Of a DNA stretch of 64,000 nucleotides, positions 1 to 62,400 are shown piece by piece. The position numbers and the translations under genes were made by a program. Within the stretch, counting starts at the first letter, position 1. Every line of letters starts with the position of its first letter. Under the pieces are notes generated by a model. That model did not search any database and was not told the DNA's origin. It saw nothing but the letters and a program-made list of their open reading frames with translations. Source of the stretch: Guillardia theta CCMP2712 (taxonomy: Eukaryota; Protista; Cryptophyta); assembly GCF_000315625.1 (NCBI RefSeq), contig NW_005434670.1, positions 682,016 to 746,015 on the forward strand. The letters run 5' to 3'.

Positions 1-3000
1 TTGCCAGCAGTACAGTTGGATGCAGGAATGATTGGATAGGGAGCGATCGTGCAGCAACACCTGGCTGATGTCCCAGACATACACTTGTCCGTGTTCGGTA
101 GCGGTGAAGAGGAAGCTGTCAGTGGGGTCAACCTGCATGGCGAGCACTCCAGATCCTTGTTTGCTGGCTCGAAATGTGACATGTAGAGGATCTTTGAGCT
201 GAGGATCCAACACGTGGACGTTCCCAGCAGAATCTCCCAGCAGACACAGGTTGTTGCTCTTGTTCAGCTTCTGCGAAGAGATAAACTTGAGGTCGTAAGA
301 GAAGCACCTGTCACTCTCTGGCTCCAAGAAAATTGACTCCCTTGACGGGTCCCAGATGACAACCTGTCCGTCCCTTCGAGCAGCGACCTGCATGCCGCCA
401 TCAACAGTGATGCAACTTGACCAGATTTTTTCTCTGCTCACCACACTCAGATGTTCATCACTGCCGACCACCGCTAGACAAGTTTGAGGAGATGTGGAGA
501 AATTTATTCCGAGCAACCTCGGCATGTCGATGATTCTTGTCTGGAAGAGAAGCGTCAGGAGAGCAGCAGGAGCCCCGCAAGGCTCTCACAGGCTTCACGT
601 CTCGCTCGTAGGGTGATGGCATCCATTGAACGAAGTAACCCCCCCCGAAGCACGCGATCACTGACCGGAACCGCTTGTGCCGTCTGGTGATCTCCATGTC
701 ATGGATGGAGTTGACGCAGGTGCAGGAGTCTGAGATCAAGTTGTTCACGAGCGACCCGTTGCTGAAGTTGTAGAGCTGAACTGAGCCCTGCGACCATCCG
801 ACCATGAGGCGGCGGGAGGAGATGTCGAACGATCCGAACGCAACGGAAGGTTCTTCTATAGTCTCTTGAACAGACTCGCACATGAACTTAAAAGACTGCA
901 GGCCTGTATCACAGTGCCATATGCTGACAAACCCTGTCTTGTCTACGGTCAAGAGGAGATCAAAGTGATCGTTGTACAGAAGCACCACCACATCTGCCTC
1001 GTGCGCTATCACTTTCTCTGATTCGCGCCGCAAATCCAGCGGCTTCACCCCATGAACTTTGATGTGATTGGTCGCGGTCACGAGGTGCATCTGCCCGGGG
1101 GGAACAAGGATACGACCGACCTTGTGGTTGATATCTGCGGGACTCTGATGGAGAGGATCGACCCGCGTGACTGGCGTCCTGCTGGCGATGTCCCATGCCA
1201 CTATCAACCCCGAGCTGTCGAGGGAGAAGAGCACGTCTCGCACCTCGTGGAAGGCAAGGTCCACCAACCCGGCATTGTGGCCGAGCAGCTCCCCGCACAG
1301 CAGGTGCTTGCCGTCTCCGCTCACGTTGGGTCGCCACAGGTGGATGGTTCTCTCCAGACCTGCGCTAGCAAGCACGTTGTTGTGTCTCCCGCACCATTCC
1401 AGGCACTTGACGGCCGAGGGATGCCGCTGGTACGGCGACAAGAGCGTCATCGAGTCAAGAGAAGCCACTGCTATGGCGCCAGAGGAACCGGCGACAAGAC
1501 AGACGCCCATGATACCCACGTCAGGCACAAACTTGACGGTGTTGCACCAAACTTCTCGTTCCCTCTCACTAGACGGGAAAACTTTGAGGCTCCTGTAGTT
1601 CACCAGCGAGTCAGAGAAGACATGAACAATATCCTGCTGGGATCTGTACGCCATGATATCATCTTCCGCTACCACATGAATGCTTCCATTGCTGTCTCCC
1701 CACACAAACCATCCTTCATGCTGCTTCTTCCCCTCGGCATTGACGTTGTCTGACCCTTCTCTTGACGGCAACAAGAAGGAAGTCAGCGCTGTCGGCCACT
1801 TGTTCTCGCACTCGAAGGTCAGAAAGTGCTTGAGCGTCGACGCGTCGTAGAGGCGAATCCTGAAGTCATCCAAGCCGATGGCGATGACGGGATGCTTCGA
1901 GAACGCCTGCCGACTGTCACATGCGGCAACGGAACCACGAGGCTGACCGTCATCGACAAGATCGTGTTGGTGCCAGAGATGCTGTCGGTCTGTCGAGAAA
2001 GCTTGGAAGACAAGGCGCTGTGGTTGAAGTTTGATGTCCGGACCTGCAGCACTCCGGCCTTGCACACAGACGCGAACATGGACAGTTGTTGTATGAACAT
2101 GAGACCAATCACTTCATCGGGATGATGAAACGCGAGGTCAAGATCCTTGAAGCATGAGCATCATGACAATCACAGGAAAGCTCTCAGCACCTCTTCGACG
2201 CTTCCATCGAAGACAGCATCGCCCTTGGCTGGGGCACTCTCTTTCATTTGCATGTCCAAGACGAAATCAGCAAATTCATCCCTGCCATGTATCGTATCAC
2301 CAAGAAGCATTCCAGATCAACACACAACCATGTCATCACTTCATCGCAATTGATGTCAATCTTGTTGAATAACAATTCAAGCTCCTTGAGAGGAAGCCTC
2401 AACACAGGAGCAAAAATCTGTAATCGTTTCAACTCTACCACCTTAGCTCAGTTGTACATACGATACCTTGACAAACTGATCTTTGTTGATGCCGGCCTGC
2501 GCTTTCGTGTTGAAGAGTGAAACTTCTCTGAACGTCTGCTGGAAAGGTAAAGAGACAACACTGACATCCCTCCCTGAGACTGACAGACCTCACTGAGAAC
2601 CTTCATGTCTTCAACCGACAACTCAGTTAGGCTTCTTGCATCAGCGACTACTGAGTTTCTCTTTTTCCGGCGCATGTCTGAACGTCTTTTGGAGAGCGAC
2701 GGGGAAGCAACGCCGAAGACAAACTCTGAGGACAGACATCAGAGAAATCTTATCGCACTCCCGTCTCGTACCGTTCAAGCTCATTCCTCCTGCCTTCATG
2801 ATGATCATTTCGATTGCGCTGGCGAATTCATATTGTGAAAGTTCCTGCACATTCACAAGAAAGCATCACTGAATGGAATCATGACAGCAGTTGACTGACC
2901 TTAGAATCAAAGTCTGAAACAGCAGAATCATTGTTGACATACTTGAACACCTTGATCGCAGTCCTTTTGTCCAACGTGGAAGGGAGCAGCTTTGAATCGT

Positions 3001-54526: not shown

Positions 54527-55152
54527 TTACTTCTTGGATGATGCAGAGACCTGGGTGGGGCCCTTGGACATGAGGCCAAGAGTCTCAGCCTTGATCTGCT
54601 CAGCGAAGCCAGTGTCGGGCTCGAGCTACACAAGCAAATCAGCGCACGTCCTCAGGACAGAACCAAGCATCCCACCTTTCTCAAGACGACCTTGACAGCC
54701 ATCTCGTCGTTGTTGTCACCAGCAGGGGATCCCTCGTACTCTCCAGCACCACGTGGGCATCCGCGAGCATCAAAAATGGTGATGATGGGGGTGTAGCTAT
54801 CGGCGGGCATCTTGGCGGCAGCGGAGGCCTGCTGAACGCCTCCGAGGAAGGGAGCGACGGCACCGGCCAAGGCAGCGCCCTGCACAACCTGTCTCCTATC
54901 CATGGACATGGACATGGTAGTTCCAGTGCGGAGGGCAGGCTGAAGAGAAAGTGAGATTGGCTCAATGGCTTCCAGCCAACATGTGCACTGCACAGCAACA
55001 TAGCAGCATGCATGATGCAATGAAGATGTCTGAAGATTCGAAATACACAATGGCATGGTCTGCTACAACATATCCACTATGATCACCTGGAACGCCGGAG
55101 CAAAGGCAGCGGCGGAGGCAACCATGGCAAGAGGAAGAGCAGCGCGGAGCAT
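54527..55152 (-). CDS. cpeA: Cryptophyte phycobiliprotein (phycoerythrin) alpha subunit
   Basis: 3 exons (55152-55087, 54939-54676, 54625-54527): signal MLRAALPLAMVASAAA-FAP, Tat motif DRRQVV..QQASA, mature AKMPADSYTPIITIFDARGCPR..EYEG..GDNNDEMAVKV. Confidence 0.93.
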
Positions 55153-56119
55153 GACGGTGGTGAAGAGTGAATGACGGTGGTGAAGGTAAATAGAAACAGA
55201 GGGAGCGGGAGGTAGGGTCATAAAAATGAAAGATCATGGATAGGGTCCCTACCCCTACCAGATGTCAGTGGGTAGATCGATTCCTTTCCTAGGAAGATGG
55301 TGGGCACCCCATCTGGTCGATTCGGCAATATCACAAGAATTTGGCGTCAGGTAGGATGTATATGCAGTTTATTTAGAGGCTCAATTAGAAATCGTGAGAG
55401 CCAAGTATACTGGGTGGGAGGAGGTTATGCAGCACCGTTAGGGGTTACATCTCTCTCACACTCGGGTGGGTAGTCGACTGGAGAAGAGTCATTTTTCGAG
55501 TCCTGGGGTAGGTTCTGCTATCGTACGGGTATGATGGTCTACTTTTGTCATAATGGGGTGGTATTGAATTTGGTGGGGTAGGGGAGTAGATAAGGACTCT
55601 GCAGAGGGGTCAAATATGTGGTCGAATATGTGGTTTATGGATTTTGAAAGGGGTTATGAAGGAGTAGGGTGGGTGAATGTACCTCCATGGATTGAAGGAG
55701 CGATCTTACAGGGGTAGTTCGAAATTTTTCAAGGGGTAGGGGTGGGTTCCGCAGGGGTTGGGCAGACGACCGGTCCGTTTACGCGTCACAAATGTGATAA
55801 CGGAATAACTTGTTATTTATAATAAATTTAGTTTTTGTGTTGTACCCCCAACTCATCTGTAATCATTCTTGTACCATCAAAGATCCCAAGGACCGGTTAT
55901 CACCCCGTCCCCCATTGGAGGGGTTTAATAATTTTTTTTTAAATAATTAATAGAGCTCAATCAGGATCGGGGGCCGAATGCTTAATATTCAATAATAGTG
56001 TAACTAGCAGATATAATTGTTATTTTCATAGAAATTCCGTGAGTAAGTTTGTTGTTAATGAATATATCGCCTATTCTTCCACCGAGGGCTATCAGAAACA
56101 TGTCAGATCGACCGAATCG

Positions 56120-56585
56120 AGTCGTTTACTCAAAGTTAAGTTAAAAATCAGTCCACCGGACGGGCGTCCCGGGGGGGCCGGGCCGCCGGGCGGCACCGGG
56201 CTACCTTAACTCTCACTGTCACTGAGTCCCCGTGGTCAGTGACTCGACTCGACTCGCCGCTGGATCGCTCAGACTCTCCGGGGCCCGAGGCGGCCGGCTG
56301 CTAGCACGGTAAGCAGAGAGTCTCGCCCACTCCAGGTTCAAGAGTCTAGGCTTGGCCACGCCGGGGGCAGCGGCGGCTCCGATCCGAGCGTCGGACCGCC
56401 CGGCCGGCACTCCGGCGAAGGCTCTGAATGCCGCGCGGCCAGTCCGGCCGGCGCCCGCCGGGCCCGGCGGTCGCCACTGAACTTGGCAGTGGCGAGTCAA
56501 GCGGCCGCCAGTCCGATCTTTCCTTTACTCAAAGCCTGGTAAGTTAGTGTCCTCAGTGGCAAGCGTCAATTTTGAGTAAAAGTTT
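56120..56585. promoter_or_regulatory. GC-rich island bracketed by TTTACTCAAA / TTTGAGTAAA within AT-rich flanks
   Basis: Begins with a 21-bp sequence identical to 29260-29280; inverted decamer at 56571-56580. Confidence 0.45.
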
Positions 56586-57651: not shown

Positions 57652-59363
57652 ATGCGTTTTGACAGGGACGTCAAGATGACGATGGCACGATACCACCCGT
57701 ACTCAGATAGTCCCACTTCGAGATCGGAAAAATCAAGAATGGAAAAGGCAGAACAACGAAAACGAACTCGGCTTTTGATCGAAGCACTTGATCCCCTTGT
57801 GCCTGTATTCTCTAGAACCTGTACGGCAGAAAAGGGAAGCTTGAGATCGAAACGAACTCTTTTACAACTGCAGGAGGATACTGTTTTCTTTCTCAAGAGA
57901 ATTACACGCAAGAAAGCCACCAGGCATGATTATGTAGATTGCGATGTCATGCGCGAAGGCATGTTGTCGAGTAGCTTCATTATATTAGTTGAGTTGGATG
58001 TGACAACGGGTGAAATCATACAATGCAGCAATGGGCTTAGCAGGTGGTATCAGCTTCACCCATCAGAAATCATCGGGCAAAACTTTGCTCATTTCCTCGA
58101 CACCAATGATGTACATAGGTTCAAGAATTTCTTGCGACTCTCTGCAAGCAAAACGACAGCAAAAGGAATCAGAGTCAAGCTTCTGACGTTTGGATCCAAG
58201 TGCTACGAGCAGCTCGAATGCACAGTTAAGGCTGTGCAAGACCCTGTCAATGGGCGGTCTGTGTTCCTGCTGAGTTTCGATGAAGAGGCACCCAAGAATC
58301 CCGACTGCTTCCCTCTTTGGAGTCCTTGCCTTCTGCGCGGGATGTCGGGGATCTTCAGGTTTGACGAGTCACAGTCGTCAGGTCCTCCTACGGATGTTGA
58401 CGGACAGATGCGGAAGTTGAGCAGGAAGGGGAATGCGGAGCTGGGTTGGTGTCAGATTGGTGTGAGCTCCCTCCTCAAGACTGAGTCTGCTCGGGCAATG
58501 CTAGACAGACTGGGAGGAGAGAACAGGCAAGCGAGCTCGATCAGCTCGGCGTTCATGCGGCTGGTGATGAAAATGGTGGAGATGCACCTTACTTTCGACT
58601 TCAACTCCCACGACGTTCCCTTCGTCGCCATGCACGCGCGTCTGAAGCTCCCGAGAGTGCTGGGATCGTTGCGAACTCCATGGTATTCCCCTTCCCCTCC
58701 TCACCTCTTTTTCCTCGCCTCCTCTCTGCTGTCATCTTTTACTGCGCTCATGCTCGCTGCTGCCAACCCCTCGTGCCTTCTCTCTTCTCTCACAGTCTGA
58801 CCTTGTCATTGAAGGGTCGAGGTTCTACACACAAGCCTTGATGGAGCTCCCGTGGAAGGGTTTCTCACGTTAGCTGGGACCCAGCTGCGCTTCTTTGCGC
58901 ATAGGAATTCTGCTCCTGGCTCGCTGCATGTCACAGGTGCAGACGTTTTCCCCTGCTGCGTGCGGTGGGGAGAGGTTGAGAGGTGACATTGTCGTTGTCG
59001 CAGGAGCGCACTATCGGCAGGAAGAAGGCGTCTGGAAGTGCTATCACACGCGAACATGGATCATCACCCCTAACAAGTCACGGATCTACGGGCAGATCTT
59101 CCGTGACCTCGATGACAAGCCTTATCAGTTCGAGCAGGTCTGCAGAACCCCCTCCTCCTCCTCGTCTCCTCCTCCTGCCCCGCCCGGTCCTTTCGGTCCC
59201 GAAACAGGGTGCACAGTGTCTCACCCTCTTCTCACGTGGCTGCCTGCCCCTCCCCCTCTCCTGCTGTACCAGTTGTCGCTCCTCCTCTCCTCACGTTCAC
59301 TCGCAGACCTTCGTTCGGGTGGAGGACCCCGATCGCTCTCTGATGTGTAAGTATGTGGTATAG
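57652..59363 (+). CDS. Divergent bHLH-PAS-like transcription factor with an additional C-terminal beta-rich domain
   Basis: Basic/helix 1 KAEQRKRTRLLIEALDPLVP; helix 2 KRTLLQLQEDTVFFLKRI; PAS ILVELDVTTGEIIQCSNGL..SEIIGQNFAHFLDTND; spliced C-terminus ending QFEQ|TFVRVEDPDRSLMCKYVV. Confidence 0.7.
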
Positions 59364-59441
59364 CAGGTAGACGTGTAAATATTCCTCAAACCGTGTGGTC
59401 TTGCTGTAGCCCATCCATCCTTCCTCTCGTCTTTATTCCCT

Positions 59442-62400
59442 TCATGTCCCCGAGTTGTTCTGCTCGCCCTCCTGCTCCTTCATCTTTGAATCGGAGGTCA
59501 CCCCTCCAAGCTTCTTGCTCCGAAAGATCGTGTAGATGCTCGTGTACTCGTGCAGACTTGCCTGCCCTCCTGCGGGCCCGAACTCACCTGCGGTTGTTCC
59601 GTCATCCCCACTCATCTCCGCCCGCCAAACCCCTCCCGCCCACTCTCCCCCGTTCTCCTCCCCACTCTCTCTACCCTCACCATTGTAGAAGCATCCAACC
59701 ACAGGGACGCCCGTTGCCATGCTTGCCATCCTGGACTCGTAGTTGGGCTCACCGAACAGCGGCCTCCCCCTGCTCCTCATCACTTTGGTGTTCCACCTCA
59801 AATCTCCTTCCTCACCGCCCGATGCAAGCAAAGAGGACGAGGCCGGCTGCTGGGGTTGACGAGCTCCCAGTCAGAAGCTCTGTGAGCCTGTACCCCGTAA
59901 GAGACATCCTCTACCTCCTCGTCCTCCTTCCCCTTCAACTTTGCCTCTCTTCCCCTCCCTTCCTAATCCTTGCACGCTCCTCCGTCTGTTCCATTCAGCG
60001 CCACCATCACCTCTGGCGCTTGTAGGATGACATGAGCGCTTCCACCTCTGCCATCGCAGCTGATCTGTCGGGCACGTGGAGCCTGCGAGACAGTGAGCGC
60101 TGGCACAGACCCGACCGCTGCATCCTTGCCTGATCCTCTGACCCGGTCGCAAGACGTCGCCCACGAGCATGGACTTGTCGTTGGCACTGACTAGGATGAT
60201 CTGTGAGAGCGAATGAGGGGAGGGTGCATGGCGAGGCAAGAAGCAGCACGGGTCTGAGCAGATAGTCCTTTCTTGGGTCCTCCTGCGAGCTCTGGGCCTA
60301 GGAAGAGAAGAATGTGAGGAGAAGAACAGGGGGTTCACAGTGCGAGCAGGGAGCAGGGGGGGAGGAGATGATGAATGATGATAGAGGCGAAGGGAGAATG
60401 TTAGAAGACGGAGAGGGAAGGGGGGTGTTGGGGGGGGGGGGAAGGAGGAGCAATACCGTTTTAGGCTGCTGCAAGTCACTGAGATTCATCGAGTTGCTCT
60501 CGACTCCAACGAACAAGGCTAACAGAGAAAGTCTGATTTCCTCTCCCTTCCCACTCCTCCTCCTCACTTCCTCCTCAACCTCCCCTCCTCCGACTCCCCT
60601 TCCGTCCATTCTCCTTCCACTTCCCCCAACCCTCCCTTCCACCACCACCACCACATCCCTCCCTCCCCTTTTCTCACCTCTCTGCGCAAGCTCGAGCTCT
60701 GCTGGGGATAGACCCTGCATCCCTGACGTCAGCCTGAGAGACCGGGGGGTGGGGGGAGGGTGACGGCAGACCTCAATCACCTTTGACAAGGCAGCCAGAC
60801 ATGTCACCTACCATCGGCTCGTGAGAGGATGAGCTGGAAGAGGTTGGAAGGTAGTGGAGGAAGGGCGAGAAGAGTAGATGAGTGAAGGAGAAGGGAAAGA
60901 TCGATGAAGGACAGTTTTAGCCTTTGAGGAGAGAGGGAGGAGGAGGAGAGGGAGAGGGGAGGAGTGGGGAGGAGAGGGGAGGAGAGGGGAGGAGAGAAGA
61001 GTTGAGGAGTAGAATGTTACAGGCGCTTCCTTTTTCAGCGGGTCGAAAACCTCGAACACCTTATTGCCCTTCGTTCGGCTGACTTCCCACTCTGGCCCTG
61101 CGTAGGAAGCCCACATGGTCACTACAAACATGATGATGGGGAAAGAAAAGCGTTTGGGGTGATTCGAAGACTAGAGTGAGGAGTGAGGAGAAGGCGCCGG
61201 AGGGAGGAGTGAGGAGGGAGGAGGGAGGAGGGAGGATGGGGGATGGAGGAGGGAGGAGAGACGAGGAAGGAGGGAGATCATCAGGGCATGCGGAGTCTAC
61301 ACACCAATGGGGCGACACCCTTGAGCCACGAGGGCCTCAGCCTCAATGTCGCCACTGAGGGTGACGACCCAGACGCCAGGAGAAGCAACCTTGTCTCTCG
61401 TCAGCTGCACGTCCCCGAAGACCGTGGACAGGAGGTCCACGTCTTGCTTGAAGCGAGCCGTGAGGCCTCCGACCTTGGTGCAGCTGAAGGGCCCAGAAAT
61501 GAGCGGCGACAAGATGGAGAGAAGGAGGACGAGGGAGGGAGGGAGGGACAAGGAGGGAGGGGGATAAGGGAGAGAAAAGGACGGGGGAGAGAGAGGGGAG
61601 GGGACCGACCCAGGATATGCGAAGTCCATCCCCTCAAGGAAGCGATCTAAGTTGCCCCGGCCAGGGAAGTTGTGCTCGCTGAAGAGGAGGAAGACGGGCC
61701 GATCTGCCGGATCCGGGCTACCAACCTGCGACAAGGTGAGTGACGGGAAGGGAGGGTGCCGTTCTGACTTACAAGCCTCCTCCACTCCTCCACGGAATCG
61801 TTGTTAGGAACCTCCTCAGCAGCGACTCTGACAATCGAGTATGTAAGACCAAGACCGCAAAGTTAATGGGTCTATTCGTGGTGGTGGTGGTGGTGGTGGA
61901 GGAGGAAGAGGAGGATGTCATCGTCAACGATGATGGCGATCGAGACGATCTACGAGAGAGGTGAGGAGAAGGAGATGTAGTTGATGTTGATGTTGATGTT
62001 GATGTTGATGATGATGATGGTCTGGTCATGGTTAGCATTGTCTCTGACAGAGATGCTTGTGTTGACGACAACAACAACTCGCCTCTGTATCTTGACGTCC
62101 ACGTTTGGAAGGCACGCGGCTGAGATCGACACAGCCTTCACCTGCTCGTACTCCTCTGGGCTCTCCTCCTCTCCCATACCGATCACGCCGGGGCTCAGGC
62201 ACCCGATGACGTGCTTGGCGCCGAGCCTCGTCCTCAACAGCTCGGTCACCTTCATCAGGTCCTCCTGCCTGGCCGGCTCTTGCGATCCTCTCATCTCGAA
62301 GAACCTGTCGGAGATGTAGCACATGACAAGGTCGATGCTTGTCCCTTCCCCGAGGTTCTCTCTGCACTTGTCCGCTGCCTCCTCTACTGTCTCTATCAAG

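What the first reader, a model, noticed from the sequence alone, without database searches (positions are those of the whole stretch)
57652..59363. bHLH-PAS-like factor apparently fused to a lipocalin/FABP-like barrel: candidate small-molecule-sensing transcription factor
Seen: a degenerate bHLH, then one PAS domain, then a ~200-aa region. That region starts SGIFRFDESQS, continues with helices and a run of short beta strands, and ends QTFVRV. Known: FABP/lipocalin barrels begin with a G-x-W/F-x-h-x-x-S strand and FABPs end with a 'R/Q-x-F/Y-x-R' strand. Classical bHLH-PAS proteins, including the diatom single-PAS ones, are not described with such a domain. Inference: this may be a cryptophyte regulator that binds a hydrophobic ligand (lipid, retinoid or bilin). 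It is transcribed divergently from a phycobiliprotein alpha gene.
Basis: partly seen in the sequence, partly recalled or inferred. Interest (0 to 1): 0.72.

Follow-up and report, generated by a model that had tools for sequence, protein, structure and literature searches.

The report
Algal bHLH-PAS factor with FABP-like barrel
This Guillardia theta gene encodes a transcription-factor-like protein (bHLH plus one PAS domain) whose last ~220 residues are predicted to fold like an animal fatty-acid-binding protein, a combination I did not find described that could let one protein both sense a small molecule and regulate genes; no ligand or DNA binding has been shown.

Summary
Window 57676-59363 (+) is a four-exon gene with GT-AG introns of 132, 67 and 169 nt. 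It equals the public model GUITHDRAFT_100377 (439 aa) of Guillardia theta.

- **N-terminal half:** a divergent bHLH plus a single PAS domain. The family profile matches ARNT/BMAL1.
- **C-terminal part:** residues ~215-434, from the SGIFRFDE strand to the TFVRVED strand, form a conserved domain with no Pfam or PDB sequence match.
- **Fold:** AlphaFold2 on an intronless paralog (32% identical, colinear) gives a confident model (pLDDT 90.7). It has one strand, a four-helix cap, then nine strands. Foldseek and VIA-align both rank fatty-acid-binding proteins (FABP), CRABP and UnaG first (Z up to 9.8, covering 93-98% of the targets). No PAS domain appears among the best matches.
- **Family:** only 64 representatives among 1.84 billion proteins. 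Every named one is a cryptophyte (Guillardia, Hanusia, Teleaulax). About 30 loci carry the domain in this genome.
- **One protein, not two:** transcriptome ORFs of paralogs and relatives carry both halves.

Ligand sensing remains an inference. The window's own protein was not folded, and no RNA reads could be obtained. The scan had already met this family on other DNA of this genome (s1-434702, s1-453433). I found no paper describing it.

The parts
57676..58682 (+). Exon 1 (residues 1-335 plus 2 nt). It holds the bHLH, the PAS domain and the first ~120 residues of the barrel domain. An upstream in-frame ATG at 57652 is not conserved.
   Evidence: ORF; identical to P0069; ATG 57652 reads ATC in relative L015
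57721..57909 (+). Divergent basic helix-loop-helix (about residues 16-78): basic stretch QRKRTR, helix 1 ending LDPLVP, a ~20-residue loop, then helix 2.
   Evidence: AF2 model of paralog L010 has helices 15-40 and 61-77, pLDDT 71-89. The family profile aligns to BMAL1 from profile position 12. No Pfam HLH hit.
57943..58278 (+). Single PAS domain (about residues 90-201)
   Evidence: Pfam PAS_9 at 105-193, 26.2 bits; profile match to ARNT PAS-A, E 4.9e-9; five-strand PAS fold in the paralog model
58318..58682 (+). Barrel domain, first part: N-terminal helix, strand A (SGIFRFDE from 58345), four-helix cap, strands B and C with the conserved H-x-R-L-K-L-P ... T-P-W motif
   Evidence: C-domain profile hit in the genome at window 58318-58683, E 2e-37; secondary-structure mapping
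58683..58814 (+). Intron 1 (132 nt, GT-AG)
   Evidence: 11.6% divergence and 16 gap columns against relative L015
58815..58936 (+). Exon 2: barrel strands D-F
   Evidence: Matches the paralog motif L-D/N-G-x-P ... F-A-H/Q ... L-H; 1.6% divergence against L015
58937..59003 (+). Intron 2 (67 nt, GT-AG)
59004..59137 (+). Exon 3: barrel strands G-H and the start of the last strand (C-Y-H-x-R-x-W motif)
   Evidence: C-domain profile hit at window 59006-59146, E 9e-8; tblastn to paralogs
59138..59306 (+). Intron 3 (169 nt, GT-AG)
59307..59363 (+). Exon 4: end of the last barrel strand (TFVRVED), short C-terminal helix, stop TAG at 59361-59363
   Evidence: Aligns to the C-terminal ends of intronless paralogs L004, L005 and L010; identical to the P0069 C-terminus

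Best explanation
The gene encodes a nuclear regulator-like protein with three modules in one chain.

1. **A divergent basic helix-loop-helix** that should dimerise and contact DNA.
2. **One ARNT/BMAL1-like PAS domain** that should support dimerisation.
3. **A ~220-residue barrel where animal bHLH-PAS proteins carry PAS-B.** It has the topology of intracellular lipid-binding proteins (FABP/CRABP): strand A, a helical cap (four helices here instead of two), then nine more strands, plus extra N- and C-terminal helices.

My best reading is that the barrel is the sensor module. I expect it to take up a small, probably lipophilic or carboxylate-bearing molecule under the helical cap, and occupancy would change dimerisation, partner choice, localisation or DNA binding. 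The protein would then work as a one-component ligand-responsive transcription factor. It is one of roughly 30 paralogs that may have diversified in ligand or partner.

**Shown:** the gene structure, the domain order, the family and its narrow range, and the predicted fold (on a paralog).

**Inferred:** DNA binding, dimerisation, the existence of a cavity, any ligand and any regulatory output.

My confidence in the architecture is about 0.85, and in ligand sensing about 0.4. The figure given is for the whole statement.
For: **Gene model**
- It equals the public protein P0069.
- It is colinear with intronless paralogs.
- It is under purifying selection, with dN/dS 0.15 overall and 0.13 over the barrel part.

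**bHLH-PAS half**
- The family profile matches ARNT (E 4.9e-9) and BMAL1 including the HLH (E 1e-5).
- The full-length paralog model matches bHLH-PAS heterodimer chains in Foldseek.

**Barrel**
- The AF2 domain model has pLDDT 90.7 and pTM 0.87.
- The Foldseek list is almost wholly calycins, with FABP1/3/4/5 at probability 0.97-0.99 and TM by target 0.5-0.6.
- In the exhaustive VIA search the top 10 are all of the FABP fold type: eight FABP-family lipid-binding proteins, a SAHS protein and the Oplophorus luciferase subunit (Z 8.0-9.1).
- The second look finds 153 chains at Z 8 or more, best 9.8. The 50 best rows (Z 9.2-9.8) have rmsd 2.6-3.8 over 116-133 residues, which is 93-98% of the target.
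- The best ESM Atlas match is a lipocalin-like cluster (TM 0.70 by target).

**One chain**
- Transcriptome ORFs from G. theta, Hanusia phi and Teleaulax amphioxeia carry both profiles.

**Family**
- 64 representatives among 1.84e9 proteins, and nearly all the long ones have the bHLH-PAS half.
- About 30 loci in the genome carry the domain.
- His/Arg/Trp positions inside the strands are conserved.
- Indels concentrate in the helical cap. In FABPs the cap is the ligand portal (general knowledge).
Against: - The fold was predicted for a paralog with 32% identity, not for this protein.
- Foldseek E-values are weak (6e-3 to 3e-2), and Z 9-10 is only modestly above the tool's stated background of 7-8.
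- There is no sequence similarity to any FABP or lipocalin (5-13% identity; no Pfam hit at E up to 1). PF00061 finds nothing in the whole genome.
- I had no coordinates, so I could not examine a cavity.
- Several proteins of FABP-like fold are not known as small-lipid carriers: the tardigrade SAHS proteins, the hepatitis E virus zinc-binding domain and BFA1 (for the matches; their roles are general knowledge).
- By my hand alignment, the canonical E-box-contacting Glu of the basic region is an invariant Lys. DNA binding may therefore be atypical or absent.
- No expression data exist for this gene itself.
Confidence: 0.5

Rival explanations
1. The barrel is real but is not a ligand sensor. It would serve as a protein-protein interaction or dimerisation surface, functionally replacing PAS-B as a docking module, or simply as a structural domain.
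For: - The most conserved motif (H-x-R-L-K-L-P ... T-P-W) alternates conserved polar residues with hydrophobic ones. This fits a conserved outer surface as well as a cavity.
- The full-length model has pTM 0.68, which suggests some fixed domain packing.
- FABP-like folds without known lipid ligands are among the matches: SAHS, the HEV domain and BFA1.
Against: - The best-matching structures by far are ligand-carrying FABP-family proteins.
- The enlarged helical cap sits where their portal is.
- Thirty paralogs with variable caps fit diversification of a binding function.
- Neither reading has been tested.
Confidence: 0.3
2. The C-terminal region is a very divergent second PAS domain (PAS-B) with extra strands, so the protein would be an ordinary bHLH-PAS-PAS factor.
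For: - Language-model features of residues 205-439 land nearest PAS clusters at 0.87-0.90. The tool calls that a lead only and says it is unmeasured for parts of proteins.
- Foldseek alignments of the full-length model to bHLH-PAS-A-PAS-B chains span 357-464 columns.
Against: - The domain model has one N-terminal strand, four helices and nine strands, not the 2+3-strand PAS sheet.
- No PAS structure is among the 50 best matches shown by the exhaustive VIA search, by Foldseek or by the second look.
- No PAS profile matches the region at E up to 1.
Confidence: 0.05
3. The barrel prediction does not carry over to this gene, or is a modelling artefact. This copy's tail would then be a different or degenerate fold.
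For: - Only a paralog was folded.
- The alignment behind the model is shallow (32 rows) and comes from one lineage.
- The structural Z-scores are moderate.
Against: - The window protein matches the C-domain profile over positions 2-216 of 222 (E 6e-76). Its exon-1 part was in that alignment, but exons 2-4 were not.
- It aligns to the folded paralog with only small indels, all in the helical cap.
- All nearly invariant residues are kept.
- dN/dS is 0.13 in this region.
- All five AF2 models agree (pLDDT 88.7-90.7).
Confidence: 0.1

Closest known systems
Algal single-PAS bHLH-PAS proteins (diatom RITMO1/bHLH1a group; Annunziata et al. 2019, PMC6600994)
   Same: Both have a bHLH followed by one PAS domain. 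Guillardia theta bHLH-PAS proteins were already listed in that survey.
   Different: That paper describes the algal proteins as having a single PAS and short C-terminal extensions. Here a conserved ~220-residue folded domain follows the PAS. The C-domain profile found no diatom or other non-cryptophyte member among the named hits.
Animal bHLH-PAS factors (ARNT, BMAL1, AHR, HIF-alpha)
   Same: Best sequence and fold matches for the N-terminal half. The logic is also shared: a DNA-binding dimerisation module followed by sensor domains, and AHR and HIF-2alpha bind ligands in PAS-B.
   Different: There is no PAS-B; a FABP-type barrel sits in its place. The basic region is atypical, with an invariant Lys where the E-box-contacting Glu is expected by my alignment.
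Intracellular lipid-binding proteins (FABP, CRABP, CRBP, bile-acid-binding protein, UnaG)
   Same: Same predicted topology: strand A, a helical cap, then nine strands forming a beta-clam. Z is up to 9.8 with 93-98% of the target aligned.
   Different: - No detectable sequence relationship (5-13% identity; no PF00061 hit).
- About 220 residues rather than ~130, with four cap helices rather than two and extra terminal helices.
- It is a domain of a larger regulator, not a free carrier.
- As far as I know that family is animal-only.
THAP4 (THAP zinc-finger DNA-binding domain fused to a nitrobindin heme barrel)
   Same: A precedent for a DNA-binding domain joined to a 10-strand FABP-like ligand barrel. 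The nitrobindin domain matches at Z 6.9 and 6.3.
   Different: The DNA-binding domain is different, the match is weaker than to FABPs, and nitrobindin lacks the helical cap. No heme ligand residue was tested here.
Phycobiliprotein lyases CpeS/CpcS and CpeT/CpcT (including Guillardia theta CPES, 4TQ2)
   Same: These are calycin-like barrels that bind bilins and occur in the same organism. They match at Z 5.7-6.5.
   Different: Their scores are clearly lower than those of FABPs, with rmsd 4.9-5.3. No sequence match was seen. A profile-profile test was not run because only an exon fragment of the genomic CpeS gene was retrieved.

Membership tests
bHLH-PAS transcription factors | Basic helix-loop-helix domain | tested here: inconclusive
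   - The paralog model predicts helix-loop-helix (helices 15-40 and 61-77).
- The family profile aligns to BMAL1 from the HLH onward (E 1e-5).
- No Pfam HLH hit at E up to 1.
- By my hand alignment on the L-x-x-x-V-P landmark, the canonical Glu9 is an invariant Lys.
bHLH-PAS transcription factors | PAS domain directly after the bHLH | tested here: met
   - PAS_9 scores 26.2 bits, just under the cut-off of 27.
- The profile matches ARNT PAS-A at E 4.9e-9, including the H-x-x-D ... R motif.
- The paralog model shows a PAS fold.
- Foldseek matches bHLH-PAS chains.
bHLH-PAS transcription factors (animal class) | Second PAS domain (PAS-B) | tested here: not met
   The family profile holds a single PAS, and ARNT PAS-A and PAS-B both align to the same profile positions. 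The C-terminal domain folds as a barrel, not a PAS.
Intracellular lipid-binding proteins / FABP (Pfam PF00061, calycin superfamily) | Ten-strand beta-clam with a helical insertion between strands A and B | tested here: met
   Tested on paralog P0008:230-458, not on the window protein. Strand 20-24, helices 33-90, then nine strand segments 91-216. Z is up to 9.8 over 93-98% of FABP chains.
Intracellular lipid-binding proteins / FABP (Pfam PF00061, calycin superfamily) | Sequence membership (profile match) | tested here: not met
   - No Pfam hit at E up to 1 on four C-domain sequences.
- No PDB sequence hit at E up to 10.
- PF00061 finds nothing in the genome.
Intracellular lipid-binding proteins / FABP (Pfam PF00061, calycin superfamily) | Internal cavity that holds a lipophilic ligand | not testable with these tools
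Lipocalins | Eight-strand barrel with a C-terminal helix and conserved sequence motifs | tested here: not met
   Lipocalins match only at Z about 4-5.4, below FABPs. In Foldseek, RBP rows have TM 0.22-0.26. The strand count is nine to ten.
Phycobiliprotein lyases (CpeS/CpeT) | Fold and sequence match | tested here: inconclusive
   Structural Z is 5.7-6.5. No profile-profile test was run.

The most novel reading that the evidence does not exclude
Cryptophytes of the Guillardia/Hanusia/Teleaulax group may have built their own nuclear-receptor-like system. About 30 paralogous one-component transcription factors would each pair a bHLH-PAS DNA-binding and dimerisation module with a FABP-type pocket. 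The pockets would read different lipophilic metabolites (fatty acids or oxylipins, carotenoid or retinoid cleavage products, bilins or other tetrapyrroles). This would be an independent origin of ligand-gated transcription from a carrier-protein fold.
Probability: 0.3. Interest if true: 0.85.

Novelty: new variant of a known kind. Interest (0 to 1): 0.62.

Why it matters
bHLH-PAS factors are the clock, hypoxia and xenobiotic sensors of animals. In algae only one member (diatom RITMO1) has a known role, and algal members are described as single-PAS proteins with short tails.

Here a lineage-restricted and strongly expanded subfamily carries a confidently predicted FABP-type barrel in place of PAS-B. 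If the barrel binds metabolites, it would be a new way to couple lipid, pigment or tetrapyrrole status directly to transcription in a secondary-plastid alga. That would be a ready-made set of about 30 natural ligand-responsive regulators.

It would also show the FABP beta-clam, usually thought of as an animal carrier fold, working as a sensor domain inside a transcription factor. Even without a ligand, the family defines a new domain and corrects the published picture of algal bHLH-PAS architecture.

Tried and rejected
- **RNA evidence.** Splicing rests on homology, the public annotation and comparative divergence.
- **Dimer test.** Complex prediction on two copies of P0069:1-215 gave no verdict (score 0.15, mark 0.32). 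I do not count it for or against binding.
- **Sequence searches of the C-terminal domain.** All of these were blank:
  - Pfam on five sequences.
  - PDB sequences with profile A2 at E up to 10.
  - phmmer of P0069 against PDB.
- **Ten longer hits that lack my N-terminal profile.** They gave no Pfam domain either. I cannot say whether the barrel also occurs in other architectures or whether these are fragments or divergent copies.
- **Language-model look-alikes of residues 205-439.** They pointed to PAS clusters. I considered this and rejected it on the fold evidence.
- **Test against phycobiliprotein lyases.** I dropped it because the genome search returned only an exon fragment of CpeS.
- **Joined spliced protein.** I built my own join only inside local scripts, for alignment and dN/dS, and never sent it to a search or folding tool. 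Searches used exon references, paralog references, or the database's own record P0069.
- **Exon-junction pattern search.** I left it out for the same reason.
Full report
**Organism and gene.** The window is contig C4:682016-746015 of an 87.1-Mb, 669-contig assembly. Proteins from it carry Guillardia theta CCMP2712 names. The ORF list shows a 382-codon frame at 57652-58800 (+). Reading the DNA and comparing it with paralogs by tblastn gave a four-exon model:
- exon 1: 57652/57676-58682
- exon 2: 58815-58936
- exon 3: 59004-59137
- exon 4: 59307-59363

The introns are 132, 67 and 169 nt, all GT-AG, and the joined frame is open to a TAG at 59361-59363. A cluster look-up later returned the public model of this very gene, P0069 (GUITHDRAFT_100377, XP_005841110, UniProt L1K0Z8, 439 aa). 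It is identical to my model from the second ATG region (57676) to the stop.

**Comparative support for the model.** A metagenome contig from a close relative (L015, ENA ERZ930064) aligns at about 96-97%.
- Intron 1 differs by 11.6% and has 16 gap columns, not a multiple of three. The exons differ by 1.6-3.8%.
- In the spliced frame dN/dS is 0.15 overall and 0.13 for the barrel part (13 synonymous against 6 non-synonymous changes).
- The ATG at 57652 is ATC in the relative, so 57676 is the likely start.

RNA reads could not be obtained.

**N-terminal half.** Pfam gives only PAS_9 (residues 105-193 of P0069, 26.2 bits, cut-off 27). A profile of 16 family members (A3) matches ARNT at E 4.9e-9 (end of helix 2 plus PAS-A). 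It matches BMAL1 at E about 1e-5 from profile position 12, which includes the HLH. ARNT PAS-A and PAS-B both align to the same profile stretch, so the family has one PAS.

AlphaFold2 on the intronless paralog L010 (= P0008, 458 aa, 32% identical to P0069 over 8-434) gives:
- two long helices separated by a ~20-residue loop (15-40 and 61-77, pLDDT 71-89)
- a five-strand PAS fold
- mean pLDDT 79.3 and pTM 0.68

Foldseek on that model returns bHLH-PAS heterodimer chains (HIF-3a:ARNT, NPAS4-ARNT2, AHR-ARNT, CLOCK-BMAL1) at E 7e-6 and weaker.

There is no Pfam HLH hit. When I align on the conserved L-x-x-x-V-P end of helix 1, the position of the E-box-contacting Glu is an invariant Lys, while the Arg four residues later is invariant (for the invariants; the alignment to canonical numbering is my own inference).

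**C-terminal domain.** Residues ~215-434 are conserved across the family (A2, A4). Nearly invariant positions are an Arg and a Pro in H-x-R-L-K-L-P, a Gly, the Trp of T-P-W and the Gly of L-D-G. The domain has no Pfam hit at E up to 1 and no PDB sequence hit at E up to 10.

Word and family searches left it open, and any novelty claim rests on absence of relatives. I therefore ran the exhaustive profile search. It found 64 representatives at E up to 1e-3 among 1.84 billion.
- Of the long hits, nearly all also match my N-terminal profile.
- Ten that do not gave no Pfam domain.
- Every named member is Guillardia theta, Hanusia phi or Teleaulax amphioxeia. The rest are unnamed environmental contigs.
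- In the window's own genome the C-domain profile hits about 30 loci, including window 58318-58683 (E 2e-37) and exon 3 at 59006-59146 (E 9e-8).

**Fold of the C-terminal domain.** AlphaFold2 on P0008:230-458 with 32 aligned family sequences gave mean pLDDT 90.7 and pTM 0.87, and all five models scored 88.7-90.7. The order of elements is:
- helix 9-17
- strand 20-24
- helices 33-42, 51-58, 60-72 and 80-90
- strand segments 91-99, 105-114, 127-133, 135-138, 147-153, 162-172, 175-186, 190-197 and 206-216
- helix 220-228

This is the topology of intracellular lipid-binding proteins (strand A, helical cap, strands B-J), with a larger cap.

| Search | Result |
|---|---|
| Foldseek vs PDB | No hit below E 1e-3. 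The list is almost entirely calycins: RBP, FABP1/3/4/5, CRABP2, P2, UnaG, SAHS and NanoLuc. FABPs score probability 0.97-0.99, TM by target 0.5-0.6, about 200 aligned columns. |
| VIA-align, exhaustive, 48,161 representatives | The top ten are all of the FABP fold type: eight FABP-family lipid-binding proteins, a SAHS protein and the Oplophorus luciferase subunit (Z 8.0-9.1, rmsd 3.2-4.2, 120-144 aligned). Next come the HEV FABP-like domain (7.5), BFA1 (7.0), THAP4 nitrobindin (6.9), the lyases CpeT, CpcT and Guillardia CPES (6.5-5.7), and lipocalins (about 5). |
| VIA-align, second look at Foldseek's best 1000 | 153 chains at Z 8 or more; the best reaches 9.8. The 50 best rows (Z 9.2-9.8) have rmsd 2.6-3.8 over 116-133 residues, or 93-98% of the target. 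|
| ESM Atlas by shape | Best match is a bacterial lipocalin-like cluster (TM 0.70 by target). |

No PAS domain appears among the 50 best matches shown by any of the three PDB searches.

The tool notes warn that a best Z of 7-8 is common for models without a clear match. What lifts this case above that background is the uniformity of the top rows and the near-complete coverage of the targets. I put the fold assignment at about 0.8-0.85.

**Transfer to the window protein.**
- P0069 matches the C-domain profile over positions 2-216 of 222 (residues 215-434). Exons 2-4 were not in the profile's alignment.
The only indels lie in the helical cap.
At the sequence level, though, there is no FABP or lipocalin membership, and PF00061 finds nothing anywhere in this genome.

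**One protein, not two.** Three lines of evidence agree:
- Intronless paralogs (L004, L005, L006, L010, L013) encode both halves in one frame.
- Transcriptome-derived complete ORFs carry both profiles: G. theta (MMETSP; P0034, P0078, P0088), Hanusia phi (P0012/P0076) and Teleaulax amphioxeia (P0093).
- The Hanusia entry closest to this gene (P0002, 84% identical over exon 1) looks incompletely spliced.

**Mechanism.** The architecture is shown. The rest is inference from family knowledge. bHLH-PAS proteins act as dimers on DNA, and their PAS-B domains can bind ligands (AHR, HIF-2alpha). FABP-type barrels hold lipophilic, usually carboxylate-bearing ligands under a helical portal.

Several features are compatible with a diversified ligand pocket:
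- The barrel sits where PAS-B would be.
- Its cap is enlarged and is the most indel-prone part among paralogs.
- Conserved His, Arg and Cys residues recur at alternate positions of neighbouring strands.

They are equally compatible with a conserved interaction surface. I could not inspect coordinates. A homodimer test of the bHLH-PAS part gave no verdict.

**Literature.** Annunziata et al. 2019 (PMC6600994) surveyed about 90 algal bHLH-PAS proteins, Guillardia included. They describe a single PAS and short C-terminal extensions. Searches for the combination with lipocalin or cryptophyte terms, and for this gene's accessions, found nothing describing the barrel.

**Earlier notes of this scan.** I read these after my own analysis. 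They report the same family on other pieces of this genome with the same reading (s1-434702, s1-453433). They also report bHLH-PAS proteins fused to cyclic-nucleotide-binding domains (s1-430472). If that is right, this alga repeatedly joins bHLH-PAS modules to small-molecule-binding domains.

**Neighbourhood.** A cryptophyte phycoerythrin alpha gene exon lies at 54652-55056 (-) (PF02972, E 2e-14). It is divergent from this gene and 2.6 kb away. Nothing I found ties the two functionally.

**Verdict.** This is a new variant of a known kind: a bHLH-PAS factor with a previously undescribed FABP-fold C-terminal domain. Function is untested.

Noticed in passing
window 54652-55056 (-): First exon of a cryptophyte phycoerythrin alpha-subunit gene (PF02972, E 2e-14). 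Its presequence contains a twin-arginine-like RRQVV motif (weak TAT_signal hit, E 0.05). It is transcribed divergently from the bHLH-PAS gene, 2.6 kb away.
   Followed up: partly
window 57652-57675: The first in-frame ATG (57652) is ATC in the 96-97% identical relative L015, and the public model starts at 57676.
   Followed up: yes
window 56100-56550: A GC-rich island (0.65-0.70) in the intergenic region between the two divergent genes, with overlapping Ala/Gly/Pro/Arg-rich ORFs on both strands. I did not examine it.
   Followed up: no
window 59400-61800: Downstream of the gene there are long stretches with extreme strand skew (GC skew -0.47 to +0.58) and Pro/Ser-rich or Gly/Glu/Arg-rich ORFs on both strands. 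This may be low-complexity repeat DNA or another gene with low-complexity exons.
   Followed up: no
L015 (ENA ERZ930064, contig k127_177297): An environmental metagenome holds a genomic ortholog 96-97% identical in DNA, with the same intron positions. A very close relative of G. theta CCMP2712 is therefore present in that sample.
   Followed up: partly
P0002 (EukProt Hanusia phi): The closest Hanusia entry reads straight through the position of intron 1 and through exon 2 in another frame, and returns to frame at exon 3. It looks like a partly unspliced transcript, so its 456-aa sequence is not the true protein.
   Followed up: partly
G000 contigs C20:335001-336260 and C20:354473-355732 (L005, L004); C55 (three copies); C14, C343, C479, C484: Paralogs occur as recent duplicates (L004 and L005 are 92.5% identical and 20 kb apart) and in clusters. 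Several C14, C343, C479 and C484 matches are short or contain in-frame stops, so they may be pseudogenes or intron-rich copies.
   Followed up: no
family alignment A3, basic region (window about 57736-57765): Across 16 family members, a Lys is invariant where canonical bHLH proteins have the E-box-contacting Glu (my hand alignment). The Arg four residues later is also invariant. This hints at a non-E-box target or altered DNA contact.
   Followed up: partly
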